Of a DNA stretch of 64,000 nucleotides, positions 23,380 through 51,370 are shown piece by piece. The position numbers were made by a program, and so were the translations under genes. Positions within the stretch are counted from its first letter, which is position 1; each line of letters starts with the position of its first letter. Under the pieces are notes generated by a model. The model saw nothing but the letters and a program-made list of their open reading frames with translations. It was not told the origin of the DNA and made no database searches. Source of the DNA: Octopus sinensis. Lineage: Eukaryota. The stretch spans positions 153,574,001 to 153,638,000 of the forward strand of contig NC_042997.1 of the NCBI RefSeq assembly GCF_006345805.1. Reading direction: 5' to 3'.

Positions 23380-23590
23380 TTTATTATATAGAAGGAGCTT
23401 CTACAGGACTAGAACTGTTTCATTCAAGAGAAATCTTCAGGAAGCTCAGTGCTTCCTGAAGATTTCTCTTGAATGAAACAGTTCTAGTCCTGTAGAAGCT
23501 CCTTCTATATAATAAATTAATTTTACTCTACTATGTATTGAGTACCTTATTTACTGTGGTTAACCCCGAATCAACCCGGGACCTACATAT
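23380..23590. mobile_element. Foldback mini-element family B (perfect hairpin 23380-23516 plus unique flank) embedded in (TA)n
   Basis: Two ~66-bp arms surround a tcagt loop. The flank to 23590 matches 44755-44825 in the opposite orientation. Confidence 0.92.
23451..23499 (+). ncRNA. Type I hammerhead ribozyme, canonical core (mirror copy on - strand at 23397-23445)
   Basis: GCTTC (stem I), CTGAAGA, tttc-tctt-gaat (stem II), GAA, ACAG-ttctagtc-CTGT (stem III), A (GUA site), GAAGC (stem I'). Confidence 0.85.
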
Positions 23591-23750
23591 ATATACATAT
23601 ATATATATATACATATATATATATATATATATATATACATATATATATATATATATATAATATACATATATATATATATATATATATATATATATATATA
23701 TATACATATATATATATATATATATACATATATATATATATATATATATA

Positions 23751-24830
23751 AAGTCAGCAGTGGTGTCCCACAAGGCACTGTGTTGGGCCCACTTCTCTTC
23801 ATCATCTACATAAATGATATTACTGACACCATCAAACACAGCAACATCAGAACCTTCGCTGATGATTCCAAGCTCCAGAAGGTCATCAATGGCGTGGATG
23901 ACCGAATAAACCTTCAGTCAGACCTACTGGCTGTTGTCCAATGGGCGGAAAAGAATAACATGTTGCTAAATGAAGACAAATTCGAACTGATCCACTTTGG
24001 AAGGGAGGACGCTCTGAAACTCCCATACTCTCTTCCTTCTGGAGAAATTCTCATGGCATCCAACAACATCAGAGACCTGGGAGTAACAGTGGACAACAAC
24101 ATAAGCTGGGCTACACATATAAGCAGCAAAGTTGACATGGCCCGCAGAATGTGTTCCTGGATTCTCAGAACCTTCCAGTCGAGAGATTCCCACGCTATTA
24201 TCCTTCTCTTCTCCACTTTTGCCCGACCCCACCTTGAATACTGCTGTCCACTGTGGTCTCCCTACACAAAACAAAATATTATGAGAATTGAAGCTCCCCA
24301 AAGGTCAATCACAAAAAAGATAGATGGCATGTCAGACCTTGACTACTGGGATAGACTAGAGAAGCTGAAATTGTATTCACTCCAACGACGCCGTGAACGC
24401 TACATTATCTGTATGATGTGGAAAATATTCCATCAGCACTGTCCGAATGATGTTGGCATCACCTTCAAAATGCATCCAAGGCTTGGACCACGTGCCATCC
24501 GTCCACAACAAAAATCTAAATCGCATCACATAACGACAATACGGCACAACTATTTCACCTCAATTGGACCCGCTCTCTTCAACATTACACCAGGACACGT
24601 CAAAAAAGAAACTGACCACACAAAATTCAAGAAGTCTTTGGACAAATTCCTTCAAACAGTACCGGACAAACCACCCACACCCGGATATGTCTCTGCAAAC
24701 AATAACTCTCTGCTCGAATGGGCCTTGGTGCCCAAATCCTGAACTGAAAGACTTCGCCAGGTGGTGCTATTAAGTTAGACATGGCCTGGGCCAATACTGG
24801 CCAAAAACCTTTCTAAGTTATTCTAAGTTA
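23751..24830 (+). mobile_element. 5'-truncated CR1-type LINE with open RT C-terminal ORF (23780-24742)
   Basis: Reads [20 protein letters not shown]...TFADDSKL...RDLGV...[13 protein letters not shown]...SLQRRRER. No stops over about 320 codons. It ends in a short ttctaagtta tandem tail and is inserted in (TA)n. Confidence 0.95.
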
Positions 24831-25399
24831 TATATATACATGCATGCATGCATACATACATACATACATACATACATACATACATATACATACATACATA
24901 CATACATACATACATACATACATACATACATACATACATATATGAGAGAGAGAGAGACATAACAAACAAAAATAATGGAGTTACCAAATTCTTTTACTGC
25001 ATCAATCTACAATTGTTTCATCTAAATTCGAACCCATGACTATTCCTATATTATGAAATAATATATACAACTATTGATTCATGCAGTATCATTGCAAAGA
25101 CACATACCGAGTTTGACTCTTCAGAATTATGTATAAAACTGGTTTGCTGTAGATACTTAAATTATCAATAATTTATACTCATATCATGTTGAGCGTTTTT
25201 ACATGATTACATTTGCATAATACAAGCAATGCAAAAGAAAATTAGCCGCTGTTTTGAATAAACGGTCAAGAAGAAGGATAAATAGAAAAAGAAAGGGAAA
25301 AGGGTTAGGAAACAGAGCAAAATGTTTAAATAAACTTATTAGACAACACCGAAATAGTACAAAATGGACTACAAATGTGAAAACAGAACAACATTTCGA

Positions 25400-48085: not shown

Positions 48086-48477
48086 TATATATATATATAT
48101 ATATATATATATTGTATATACATATATATATATATATGTGTGTGTGTCCCCGTATATGTATGTATGTATATACATATACATATATATACATATATATATA
48201 CATTATATATATATATACATATATACATATATACATATATATATATTATATATATATATATACATATATATATATATACATATATATATACATATATATA
48301 TATATATATATATATATACACGCACACACACGCACACACATACGCGCACACATACACACACACACACATATATATATATATATATATTATATATATATAT
48401 ATATATATATATATATATTATATATATATATATATATATGTATGTATAAGGGTGGAAAGGACACACGAGTTGATATA

Positions 48478-51120
48478 TATGAAAAAACAAGTCAAAAATA
48501 GAAAACGCTAAGATGATTTTATAGTGAATCTTTCAGTACCGGTTTCGGTCATTTTGAGACCTTTTCAACTGTAACGATTAAATAATTAAAGTTAGAAAAA
48601 TTAGAAGAAAAGTTTTTTAAAAGAATATTTCTGTAGTAGTGTTCAGATATAAGTAGCATTCTGCCTTTCTCTGACTCCCTTGTTTGAATGGTCAGTGGCT
48701 GACAGTAGTCGCAGTTCAATTCAGGAATTGTTTATGGAATTTGCGTAGGCGTTATACTGAAAGACATTAGTGACAAGGTTAAGGGGTGGAAGGTGGAGAA
48801 GTAGAAGAAGAAGAAGATGACGATGTTGATGATGATGATGATGAAGAAGAAGAAGAAGAAGAAGAAGGAGAAGATGGTGGTGATGATGATGACGACGATG
48901 ATGATGATAATGATGATGATGAAGAAGAAGAAGAGGAAGAAGAAGAAGAAGAAAAAACAGAGAAGGGAGAATATGAATGGGTGTAAGTATAGCTTTGATG
49001 GGGCTGATTAGTAATGGATTCTATGGAGTGTAATATTTGTGTGTGTATATATTTCTTTTATTCTAAAGTTGAGGTATATTAATTGTTTGTCGTAGACCCG
49101 TTAAGAAGTGGCTTGTATTTTGTAATAAAGAGATTTTCTTTACTTAATTCGTTGTCTCGAGGTTGTATCGTCCCTAAATTGGTAGAGGGGGAAAATTCTG
49201 AAGTTTGGTGTTTTTTTGTTGGCGCAAGTATCTATGTGTTGGCTAAAAGCTATTTTTCTGTTTTGGGGAATTTTTATCTGGGATCTGTGCAGGGCCATTA
49301 GTTTACGCAAACCATTTTTTGTTCGGCCTACGTACTGCTCTTGACACCCGGAGCAGGTTAGTGAGTATATTAGGTTCTCCGAAGCACATGTGAAGTTGCT
49401 TTTCACTGTAAACCGTTGTCCCTGTTTGAAGGAGAACTCTGATCCCTCAATTAGATAGTCGCATATCCCGCAATTGGGTCTTCCACATTTTTTTACTGTA
49501 CTGTCGCTTCTGTGTTGAAGAGTGAATTCGGGCTTGTGTAAGGAGACTTTTCATGGATCTAGGCTGTCTTTTGCTTTTTATGATCGTGTGTGTTTGGAGG
49601 ATGTGTTCATTCTGTGGTCTTTTTTAGGAGGGGTATGTTGTGGAGGATGGTGTCGAAGGCTTCGTTATTGAGAGGGTTGTGTGTGGAGATGTATGGTAAG
49701 GCTTTTGGTTGTAAGTTTTTCTTTGATTTGGGATGTCTCAGTTCCTTGATGTTAAGTTGAAGGGCACGTTGAATGCACTTGTCAATAAGTGAAGGTGGAT
49801 AGTTCCTGGTGATAAGGGTATCTTTTAGTTCTTGTAGTCGTGTGTCTCTGGTGTTTGCGTTAGAGACTATAGTGCATATCCTTTTTGCTAGATTGAAGGG
49901 GATATTCATCCTGGTGTGTCTGGGGTGGCATGAATTGAATGGAAGATATTGCTTAGAGTCTGTAGGCTATAGTATATGTCTGTTTCTATTATTTATTAGC
50001 TTTCTTAAGAGGATATCGAGGAAGGGAGTTGTTGTTGGCTATTTCCATCGTGAATTTGATGTTTACGTCCAGTCCGTTTAAAATTTTCTGGAATTCTATG
50101 AGTTTTTCTATATTTTTATGCCAAAGGATAAACAGTCATCTAGATATCTCTTCCAGTTGTTTTCTATGTAGATGGAGAAAGGGCTGCCATATCTTTCTAG
50201 AACCTTACGATACAGACTGATCTCTAGGTATCCTATGACTAGGTTGGCAAAGGAGGGGGCCATTCGTGTACCCATCGCAGTCCCCCGAAAATCTCTTTAT
50301 TACAAAATACAAGCCACTTCTTACGGGTCTACGACAAACATTAATATACCTCAACTTTAGAATAAAGAAATAAAATGAAAAATATACATACAACCAAGAT
50401 ATAGAATAAAAATATATATACAAATATAATAATCACACACCATCCATAGAATCCATTACTAATCAGCCCCATCAAAGCTATACTTACACCCATTCATATT
50501 CTCCCTCTCTCTTTTTTTTCTTCTTCTTCTTCTTCCTCTTCTTCTTCATCATCATCATTATCATCATCATCGTCATCATCATCATCACCACCATCATCAC
50601 CACCATCCACTTCTCCTTCTCCTTCTCCGTCTTCTTCTTCTTCTTCTTCTTCTTCATCATCATCAACATCGTCATCTTCTTCTTCTTACTTCTCCACCTT
50701 CCCCCTTAACCTTGTCACTAATGTCTTTCAGTATAACGCCTACGCAAATTCCATAAACAATTCCTGAATTGAACTGCGACTACTGTCAGCCACTGACCAT
50801 TCAAAATACGACCATTAAGGCATTCCAGATTTCCCCACCCCCTCTCCACATCACCTCATTATTCTTCACCTATCCTAGCAAGAACTCAAAACGACCTCGA
50901 ACACACAAGTGCAAACAAGGAGTCAGAGAAAGGCAGAATGCTACTTATATCTGAACACTACTACAGAAATATTCTTTTAAAAAAACTTTTCTTCTAATTT
51001 TTCTAAATTTAATTATTTAATCGTTACAGTTGAAAAGGTCTCAAAATGACCGAAACCGGTACTGAAAGATTCACTATAAAATCATCTTAGCATTTTCTAT
51101 TTTTGACTTGTTTTTTCATA
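48478..51120 (-). mobile_element. Neptune-type Penelope-like element, 5'-truncated, with inverted terminal duplication
   Basis: The minus strand encodes GTAMGTRMAPSFANL, WKRYLDDC, KQYLPFNSCHP, NIPFNLAKRICTIVS, linker CGRPNCGIC and GIY-YIG NLIYSLTCSGCQEQYVGRT...H...H. Arms at about 48478-49140 and 50288-51120 are inverted repeats. Confidence 0.92.
51024..51067 (+). ncRNA. Minimal type I hammerhead, U3-A8 core, in PLE terminus (mirror copy on - strand at about 48531-48574)
   Basis: ttaCAG, TTGAAAA, GGTC-tcaaaat-GACC, GAA, ACCGGT (palindromic stem III), A (GUA site), CTGaaa. Stem I can extend through aatc/gatt. Confidence 0.8.
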
Positions 51121-51150
51121 TATATATATATATATATATATTATTATATA

Positions 51151-51370
51151 CTTTATTTAAAGCAGCGGAAAATTCAATAAAACCTGTTACTCTGAGTTTC
51201 ACGTCCCCGTTCGTCGGACAGTTTTTGTCCGACGAACGGGGACGTGAAACTCAGAGTAACAGGTTTTGTTGAATTTTCCGCTGCTTTAAATAAAGCATAT
51301 TACTCTACCACTGGTATTTGAGTACTCTTTTTCCACCTTGTTTCACATTTATGTGTTTACTCCGGTATAT
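51151..51370. mobile_element. Foldback mini-element family A, second copy
   Basis: Hairpin at 51151-51295; flank gcatattactctaccactggtatttgagtactc...ccggtatata as at 44598-44670. Confidence 0.92.
51226..51261 (+). ncRNA. Minimal type I hammerhead, U4C core (mirror copy on - strand at about 51185-51220)
   Basis: TGT, CCGACGA, ACG-ggga-CGT, GAA, ACTC-A-GAGT, A, ACA. Confidence 0.72.

What the first reader, a model, noticed from the sequence alone, without database searches (positions are those of the whole stretch)
23380..51370. Recurrent (TA)n-embedded foldback mini-elements each built around a hammerhead ribozyme
Seen: at least five short non-coding elements (23380, 36119, 44451, 44755, 51151) share one design. 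A hammerhead-containing segment is duplicated as an inverted repeat and lodged in or beside a (TA)n tract; four of them also carry a ~70-100 bp unique flank. They fall into three unrelated ribozyme sequence families. Differences between copies of a family fall on positions free to vary in the fold (N7, loop II, base of stem II). Within a copy both arms carry the same variants, so each hairpin arose at or after its own insertion. Established: PLE termini and animal retrozymes carry small type I hammerheads, and PLEs often form inverted termini. Inference: these are non-autonomous, microsatellite-targeting ribozyme retroelements mobilised by PLE enzymes. A systematic foldback form may not be described as a class.
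Basis: partly seen in the sequence, partly recalled or inferred. Interest (0 to 1): 0.88.

Follow-up and report, generated by a model that had tools for sequence, protein, structure and literature searches.

The report
Penelope-type hammerhead foldbacks in TA microsatellites
The five small hairpin repeats are real copies of abundant octopus mobile elements that carry hammerhead-like motifs, but their layout is the published insertion scar of Penelope-like retrotransposons, so they are new examples of a known thing.

Summary
All five elements exist at the stated places. They belong to three abundant repeat families. A and B are a palindrome plus a one-sided tail of about 66 nt. C is a 359-bp partial tandem joined to an inverted copy. 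All lie in or beside (TA)n.

Family A arms hold a complete type I hammerhead consensus, with a U.U at the base of helix II. That pattern occurs 5,920 times in the genome. Family B carries CCGA instead of CUGA (U4C) in 93% of exact copies, and its hammerhead fold is energetically poor. Family C has the U3-A8 core variant already described for Penelope-like elements (PLEs). Rfam calls none of them.

It is a frameshifted RT plus GIY-YIG PLE, with the same hammerhead, one-sided tail, (TA)n flanks and head-to-head inverted copy.

TA targeting, inverted 5'-truncated copies and a one-sided tail are published PLE hallmarks (PMC8557442, PMC4209133). PLE-type mobilisation is therefore supported. A new class is not.

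Cleavage is untested. No coding partner sharing sequence with A, B or C was found. Other agents of this scan reported the same layout on other pieces of this genome.

The parts
23377..23445 (-). Family A copy 1, distal arm. Complete hammerhead-like motif on the minus strand.
23451..23519 (+). Family A copy 1, tail-proximal arm. Type I hammerhead consensus at 23451-23499: CUGAAGA core, helix I 5 bp, helix II 3 bp with a U.U base, helix III 4 bp, H17=A.
23520..23585 (+). Family A copy 1, one-sided tail, followed by (TA)n.
44755..44818 (-). Family A copy 2, one-sided tail. This copy is in the opposite orientation.
44820..44864 (-). Family A copy 2, tail-proximal arm, truncated. It lacks the hammerhead core.
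44860..44927 (+). Family A copy 2, distal arm, with a complete hammerhead-like motif at 44860-44908.
44446..44603 (+). Family B copy 1, palindrome of two 75-nt arms. Each arm has a hammerhead-like motif with a CCGAUGA core.
44604..44670 (+). Family B copy 1, one-sided tail.
51146..51300 (+). Family B copy 2, palindrome. Each arm has a CCGACGA core.
51301..51366 (+). Family B copy 2, one-sided tail.
36119..36519 (-). Family C: one 359-bp unit plus 42 bp of the next unit. U3-A8 hammerhead-like motif on the minus strand, core starting at 36236. Abuts a CR1 reverse-transcriptase fragment on the left.
36516..36732 (+). Family C, inverted copy. U3-A8 hammerhead-like motif at 36521-36561.
36733..36789 (+). 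Family C tail segment, present at the long 3' ends only, followed by (TA)n.
48444..48472 (-). Coding PLE 'D': 29-nt tail after an ATATATAT spacer. Present at this end only.
48473..50443 (-). Coding PLE 'D', main copy, 5'-truncated and frameshifted. GIY-YIG at 49143-49547, RT at 50111-50293, U3-A8 hammerhead with core starting at 48568.
50443..51125 (+). Coding PLE 'D', inverted 5'-truncated copy of the 3' end. Hammerhead at 51026-51065. No tail.

Best explanation
The five elements, plus a sixth coding one in the window, are insertions made by Penelope-like-element (PLE) retrotransposition into (TA)n microsatellites of an octopus-like genome.

Families A and B are short non-coding elements. Their unit is a hammerhead-like motif, then 20-40 nt, an AT-rich spacer and a tail of about 66 nt. 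Family C is a 359-bp pseudo-LTR-like partial tandem.

Inferred mechanism: two cDNAs are primed on the two nicked strands of the TA target. One is primed at the RNA 3' end and keeps the tail. The other is primed at the internal TA-like spacer and has no tail. Both run towards the RNA 5' end and are joined head to head. This gives a palindrome with identical variants in both arms, a variable centre and a tail on one side.

The hammerhead-like motifs are inherited from PLE 3' ends. Family A may still cleave. Family B probably does not, and still amplified.

Shown here: the anatomy, the copy numbers, the agreement between arms, and the coding PLE with the same layout. Inferred: the priming model, mobilisation in trans, and ribozyme activity.
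For: - Anatomy and recurrence in the genome.
- (TA)n on both flanks of 26 of 28 B copies, against a 4.2% background.
- Coding PLE in the window with hammerhead, one-sided tail, inverted copy and (TA)n flanks. Its family gave 16,973 first-look candidates with open frames up to 789 aa. An intact paralog scores RVT_1 35.3 bits and GIY-YIG 21.7 bits.
- In B and D the tail starts after a TA-repeat spacer; in A and C after an AT-rich, TA-like stretch.
- Family C head-to-head copies usually have one long end and one short end.
- Arm haplotypes are identical in 16 of 25 B copies, against 2.2 expected.
- One B insertion, sampled as two loci with near-identical right flanks (L042 and L058), has arms matching two different common haplotypes. 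This fits two separate templates.
- Hammerhead-like motifs exceed the shuffle expectation.
- Literature: PLEs target (TA)n, form tandem and inverted copies and carry a one-sided tail (PMC8557442). U3-A8 and minimal hammerheads occur in PLEs (PMC4209133). A U.U at the base of helix II occurs in axolotl hammerheads that cleave (PMC7229834).
Against: - No coding PLE sharing sequence with A, B or C was found among the 3' ends sampled. Mobilisation in trans is therefore inferred from architecture only.
- Target-site duplications cannot be read inside (TA)n.
- Five family A copies share a G at position 15.1 of the tail-proximal arm although they differ elsewhere; in four the other arm has A, in L029 both arms have G. 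The four asymmetric copies fit poorly with both arms being copied afresh from one RNA.
- Centre deletions could also arise after insertion, because long palindromes are unstable.
- Rfam finds no hammerhead at the five sites.
Confidence: 0.8

Rival explanations
1. These are ribozyme-centred retrozyme-like elements. The hammerheads are active, cut the transcripts and are needed for propagation, possibly through circular or unit-length RNAs.
For: Family A has every invariant core base and three helices. Its hammerhead fold lies within 1.2-2.5 kcal/mol of the minimum free energy. Variation among 61 arms falls on N7 and loop II. The arm pattern occurs 5,920 times. Family C is a partial tandem, like retrozymes.
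Against: - A transcript of a single foldback has only one sense hammerhead, so it cannot release a unit or a circle.
- Element ends are not at the predicted cleavage site.
- The full foldback RNA would be a hairpin of -128 to -138 kcal/mol, which excludes the ribozyme fold.
- Family B amplified with U4C, 1,698 against 119 exact copies. Its hammerhead fold is about 12 kcal/mol worse than the minimum.
- Contigs showed no informative ends or back-joints.
Confidence: 0.15
2. The palindromes are inherited whole from palindromic master copies, and the arms are kept alike by repair or gene conversion. They are not rebuilt at each insertion.
For: Four long family A copies share the same difference between arms at one position. 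Long perfect palindromes can be corrected within a strand.
Against: At least nine arm haplotypes occur in B, most of them symmetrical within a copy. One B insertion (loci L042 and L058) has chimeric arms that match two common haplotypes. Single-arm copies exist. The coding PLE copy shows the same head-to-head form with unequal arms.
Confidence: 0.2
3. These are DNA-level foldback elements, MITEs or Helitron-like elements that target AT or TA.
For: They have hairpin shape, are small, and sit in TA flanks.
Against: The outer ends are not inverted repeats of each other, because of the one-sided tail. There are no 5'-TC or CTRR-3' ends. Arm lengths vary at the centre. A PLE with RT and endonuclease shows the same layout.
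Confidence: 0.03
4. The hairpins are assembly chimeras.
For: Palindromes are hard to assemble. Contig depth drops at the palindrome centre.
Against: Dozens of loci have different centres and flanks. There are thousands of paired opposite-strand hits genome-wide. A contig from another DNA run crosses a centre (record 9).
Confidence: 0.02

Closest known systems
Endonuclease-positive Penelope-like elements that target (TA)n: Hydra, Naiad and Neptune clades (Craig et al. 2021, PMC8557442)
   Same: Insertion into (TA)n. Partial tandems (pseudo-LTRs). An inverted 5'-truncated copy joined head to head. An extra tail at one end only. A hammerhead motif near the 3' end. A coding copy with exactly this layout lies in the window.
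   Different: Families A, B and C have no ORF. A and B are only about 135-150 nt per arm and their tail is about 66 nt, against the 30-40 bp reported. No coding relative sharing their sequence was found. The clade of the window's PLE was not determined.
Minimal and variant hammerheads of PLEs (Cervera and de la Pena 2014, PMC4209133)
   Same: Type I topology. A short palindromic helix III in families C and D. U3-A8 core covariation. Motifs often occur singly or as close pairs on opposite strands in truncated PLEs.
   Different: Family A has a longer helix III (4 bp with an 8-nt loop). Family B has C at position 4, which that paper does not describe as far as I read it.
Metazoan non-LTR retrozymes (Cervera and de la Pena 2020, PMC7229834; Li et al. 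2026 preprint)
   Same: Short non-coding elements with type I hammerheads, thought to depend on PLEs. A U.U at the base of helix II occurs in one axolotl hammerhead that cleaves.
   Different: Retrozymes are direct tandem arrays that give circular RNAs. A and B are inverted pairs or single units, not tandems, and no circular RNA evidence was obtained.
Schistosome Sm-alpha and Sj-alpha SINE-like hammerhead retroposons (from my own knowledge, not read here)
   Same: Short, dispersed, non-coding retroposons that carry a hammerhead.
   Different: As I recall them, they are not foldbacks embedded in (TA)n.

Membership tests
Hammerhead ribozyme, type I | Invariant core: C3 U4 G5 A6 N7 G8 A9, G12 A13 A14, A15.1-U16.1, H17 not G | tested here: inconclusive
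   Family A meets it fully. Family C meets it in the documented U3-A8 covariant form (PMC4209133). Family B fails at U4: C in 52 of 61 arms, and 1,698 CCGA against 119 CUGA exact copies genome-wide.
Hammerhead ribozyme, type I | Three helices around the core, with helix I open | tested here: met
   Helices I/II/III in base pairs. A: 5-7 / 3 plus a U.U / 4. B: 4-5 / 2-3 / 3. C: 5 / 4 / 2. A's fold is near the minimum free energy. B's is about 12 kcal/mol worse.
Hammerhead ribozyme, type I | Match to the curated Rfam covariance models | tested here: not met
   No hammerhead hit at the five sites at the gathering score, or at E<=10 on sub-regions of 491 and 701 nt. Only the coding PLE's motif is hit: Hammerhead_HH9, 22.9 bits against a gathering score of 52.
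Hammerhead ribozyme, type I | Compensatory changes in the helices | tested here: inconclusive
   Within families the stems do not vary. Across families A, B, C, D and two coding-PLE families, all stems differ in sequence yet still pair. That comparison was fitted by my own descriptor.
Hammerhead ribozyme, type I | Self-cleavage at H17 | not testable with these tools
   Only assembled contigs were available. They show no ends.
PLE-type insertion | (TA)n target | tested here: met
PLE-type insertion | Head-to-head inverted 5'-truncated copy and/or partial tandem | tested here: met
   A and B are inverted pairs with variable centres. C is 1.5 tandem units plus an inverted copy in most of 20 loci. 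D is a coding copy plus a 683-nt inverted copy.
PLE-type insertion | Extra tail at one end only | tested here: met
   Tail lengths: A and B about 66 nt, C 59 nt, D 29 nt. The tail follows a TA-repeat spacer in B and D and an AT-rich, TA-like stretch in A and C.
PLE-type insertion | Sequence shared with an autonomous PLE that encodes RT and GIY-YIG | tested here: not met
   A, B and C share nothing with the 3' ends of the coding PLE families sampled. Long relatives of A (L097, L098) carry no PLE protein. The sampling was small.
Metazoan non-LTR retrozyme | Direct tandem array of hammerhead-bearing monomers that yields circular RNA | tested here: not met
   A and B are inverted or single. C is only a partial tandem. 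No back-joints were seen in contigs. This is weak evidence, since contigs cannot show circles well.
MITE or Helitron | Terminal inverted repeats with a fixed target duplication, or 5'-TC and CTRR-3' ends with a 3' hairpin | tested here: not met
   The element ends are asymmetric and lack those termini.

The most novel reading that the evidence does not exclude
Short units of hammerhead plus tail would form a self-perpetuating class of PLE-dependent 'retro-palindromes'. Both arms would be re-made from one RNA at every cycle, by dual priming at the RNA 3' end and at an internal TA-like spacer. This would explain the long-puzzling one-sided tail of PLEs. The variant hammerheads (U.U base of helix II, U4C) would still act in processing.
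Probability: 0.15. Interest if true: 0.6.

Novelty: new member of a known kind. Interest (0 to 1): 0.3.

Why it matters
These families number in the thousands in an octopus-type genome. Pipelines probably file them as unclassified SINEs or unknown repeats, so recognising them as PLE-type insertions improves repeat annotation.

The data also bear on how PLEs integrate, which is still unclear. Four independent families show a tail that begins after a TA-repeat spacer or AT-rich, TA-like stretch. The two arms usually come from one template, and in one insertion from two.

Family B shows that an element can reach over a thousand copies with a core change (U4C) expected to cripple the ribozyme. This fits the published doubt that hammerheads are needed for PLE spread.

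Tried and rejected
- Rfam at the gathering score and at E<=10 gave no hammerhead at the five sites.
- My first strict descriptor missed family A because of its U.U closing pair. It also missed family C, because two core bases change together. Adding the U3-A8 core fixed this.
- The CR1-type LINE in the window was tested as a SINE partner. Its 3' end is unrelated, so this was rejected.
- The search for a coding partner found nothing. The 3' ends of 13 GIY-YIG loci share no sequence with A, B or C, apart from a B copy inserted in L093.
- Two widely spaced opposite-strand pairs of family A motifs (L097, L098) turned out to be long non-coding relatives, not coding PLEs.
- RNA evidence was not informative. 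Only Logan contigs were available. Family B words occur in runs guessed to be RNA from two species labels, but the depth profile matches the DNA run and no ends or joints were useful.
- A covariance model built from PLE-linked hammerheads was abandoned, because MAFFT misaligned the cores.
- Similarity between the B and D tails is not significant: 163 of 2,000 shuffles reach it.
- Pfam on the short ORF pieces of the window's PLE was below the cut-offs: GIY-YIG 13.5 bits, RVT_1 14.1 bits. The intact paralog was used instead.
This limited sampling.
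Full report
**Observation**

The window lies on a 2.72-Gb, 13,516-contig animal assembly, at C1:153,574,001-153,638,000. Notes from other agents call it an octopus; I did not verify the species. 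All five elements are inverted repeats at the stated places (sequences).

Each element belongs to a dispersed family. First-look candidates number at least 237 for family A (23377-23585 and 44755-44927). They number at least 1,385 for family B (44446-44670 and 51146-51366). They number at least 2,399 for family C (36119-36789), whose copies are 98-100% identical.

**Anatomy of families A and B**

I aligned 30 genomic copies of each family. Both share one plan: a palindrome of two arms of about 69-76 nt, then a unique tail of about 66 nt on one side only, with (TA)n outside both ends.

The (TA)n is there even when the sequence further out is not TA-rich. It lies within 14 nt of both ends in 26 of 28 B copies. 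Perfect (TA)n of four or more units covers only 4.2% of the window.

The palindrome centre differs from copy to copy, because one or both arms stop short of it.

The first 30 nt of the A and B tails are related; only 4 of 2,000 shuffles reach that alignment score. The two families are therefore not fully unrelated.

Unselected copies found by chance in the flanks of fetched loci include foldbacks (L013, L036, L039). They also include single-arm units (L029, L044).

**Anatomy of family C**

The 359-bp unit typically occurs as about 1.5 tandem units, which gives a pseudo-LTR-like layout. An inverted, truncated copy is often joined head to head.

The constant end abuts (TA)n and comes in two forms: a long form, and a short form lacking 59 nt. 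In head-to-head copies one end is usually long and the other short. The short end falls at a TA-like stretch.

Positions 48444-51125 hold a large inverted structure. Its minus strand carries frameshifted reverse-transcriptase and GIY-YIG endonuclease remnants (weak Pfam support).

The endonuclease piece has 16,973 first-look relatives in the genome, and scored copies have open frames of up to 789 aa. One intact paralog (L096) encodes 717 aa, with RVT_1 at 35.3 bits and GIY-YIG at 21.7 bits. Its database relatives carry the same domains.

This copy ends with a hammerhead-like motif, 56 nt, an ATATATAT spacer, a 29-nt tail and then (TA)n. The 683-nt inverted copy at the other end stops at the spacer and has no tail.

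So a coding Penelope-like element (PLE) shows the layout of A, B and C within the same window.

**Are the hammerheads real?**

Rfam reports no hammerhead at the five sites, at the gathering score or at E<=10 on small sub-regions. Only the coding PLE's motif is touched: Hammerhead_HH9 at 22.9 bits, against a gathering score of 52.

The genome does hold canonical hammerheads. Eight Hammerhead_1 hits reach or exceed the cut-off among only 74 candidates scored.

My own type I descriptor gave these results:
- Family A: the full canonical core. Helix I is 5-7 bp, helix II is 3 bp closed by a U.U, helix III is 4 bp, and H17 is A.
- Families C and D (the coding PLE): the U3-A8 core, a 4-bp helix II and a minimal palindromic helix III.
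- Family B: the same architecture, but with C at position 4.

Dinucleotide shuffles of the window give 0.05, 0.27 and 0.02 hits for these three cores. Chance is therefore unlikely, above all because the motifs sit at the same place in elements of the same build.

Published work covers two of the deviations. U3-A8 and minimal helix III are described for PLE hammerheads (PMC4209133). A U.U at the base of helix II occurs in an axolotl hammerhead that cleaves (PMC7229834). A coding PLE family in this genome (L094) also combines a canonical core with a U.U base.

Folding results:
- Family A's hammerhead fold is 1.2-2.5 kcal/mol above the minimum free energy.
- Family B's is about 12 kcal/mol above it.
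- Full foldback transcripts would form hairpins of -128 to -138 kcal/mol, which leaves no room for a ribozyme fold.

**Variation and census**

Among 61 family A arms, the variable sites inside the motif are N7 and two loop II positions. A third site, at position 15.1, is partly an alignment artefact at the arm junctions. Among 68 family B arms, the variable sites are position 4, N7, loop II, position 11.1 and a few others. Positions 4 and 7 of B are CpG sites.

Genome-wide counts:
- The family A arm pattern (one mismatch allowed) occurs 5,920 times; the reversed control occurs 0 times.
- The family B arm occurs 1,698 times with CCGA and 119 times with CUGA. The CUGA copies are mostly unpaired, as CpG decay after insertion would predict.

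Family B thus amplified with a change at an invariant core base. From my own knowledge, such changes strongly reduce hammerhead activity.

Among the first 100 family A hits:
- 11 pairs are tight foldbacks, 37-52 nt apart.
- 16 pairs lie 0.2-6 kb apart in the same outward-facing order.
- Only 1 pair has the opposite order.
- The rest are single.

Two of the wide pairs (L097, L098) are long non-coding relatives. Their inverted arms run 330-900 nt beyond the motif, and they carry no PLE protein. The tight foldback is therefore one arrangement among several.

**Do the arms arise together?**

At nine polymorphic sites, 16 of 25 family B copies have identical arm haplotypes. Random pairing gives 2.2, and none of 20,000 shuffles reaches 16.

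One B insertion, sampled as two loci with near-identical right flanks (L042 and L058), has arms that match two different common haplotypes. This fits two separate cDNAs better than a snap-back copy or inheritance of a whole palindrome.

One observation fits poorly. Five long family A copies share a G at position 15.1 of the tail-proximal arm, although they differ at N7 and loop II. In four of them the other arm has A; in L029 both arms have G.

**Mechanism**

The literature states that endonuclease-positive PLEs of the Hydra, Naiad and Neptune kinds insert into (TA)n. They form partial tandems and inverted 5'-truncated copies, and they carry a 30-40-bp tail at one end only. The role of their hammerheads is described as unclear (PMC8557442).

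The elements here match every one of these hallmarks.

I infer target-primed reverse transcription on both strands of a TA target. One cDNA starts at the RNA 3' end and keeps the tail. The other starts where the TA target can pair with the internal TA-like spacer, and so lacks the tail. The two cDNAs are then joined head to head. The spacer is present in all four families, but the priming model itself is untested.

**What was not achieved**

No coding PLE sharing sequence with A, B or C was found. RNA data were contigs only and were uninformative.

**Comparison and verdict**

This is a clear case of a known kind: PLE-type head-to-head insertions and their short non-coding relatives. Two details may be useful to specialists. 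One is the tail following a TA-repeat spacer or AT-rich, TA-like stretch. The other is a high-copy family with a U4C core.

Other agents of this scan reached similar readings on other pieces of this genome. I treated those notes as leads only.

Noticed in passing
It has frameshifted RT and GIY-YIG remnants on the minus strand, a head-to-head 683-nt inverted copy, U3-A8 hammerheads at both outer ends and a 29-nt tail at the left end only.
   Followed up: yes
window 23750-24848 and 35940-36118: Two fragments of a CR1-type LINE reverse transcriptase. Its 3' end carries TTCTAAGTT repeats. Both fragments begin right at a (TA)n tract. The second is cut off by the family C insertion at 36119, which there lacks its normal 3' end.
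   Followed up: partly
L018, L020, L023, L026, L029 (family A copies): Five near-complete palindromes share a G at hammerhead position 15.1 in the tail-proximal arm, although they differ at N7 and loop II. In four the other arm has A; in L029 both arms have G. Unexplained. An RNA-editing-like A-to-G change is one idea, not tested.
   Followed up: no
L097 and L098 (G000:C1:35419950-35424150 and C1:47730100-47734400): Long non-coding relatives of family A. The hammerhead-plus-tail module caps inverted arms of 330-900 nt that flank 2-3 kb of microsatellite-rich sequence. Genome-wide, such outward-facing pairs 0.2-6 kb apart far outnumber inward-facing pairs: 16 against 1 in the first 100 hits.
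   Followed up: partly
L096 3327 versus window 48473-48670: An intact 717-aa paralog of the window's PLE lacks the segment of about 198 nt that holds the hammerhead in the window copy. Not all copies of this coding family carry the motif.
   Followed up: no
L085 versus L094: Two copies of another coding PLE family differ at hammerhead position 4: CCGAAGA in L085 and CUGAAGA in L094. Both have a U.U at the base of helix II.
   Followed up: partly
L097 about 245-260, and family B centre: In both families the arms start within a few bases of the 5' edge of helix I, next to a CTAG. PMC4209133 notes that in Drosophila Penelope an intron end maps to the 5' end of helix I. The meaning here is unknown.
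   Followed up: no
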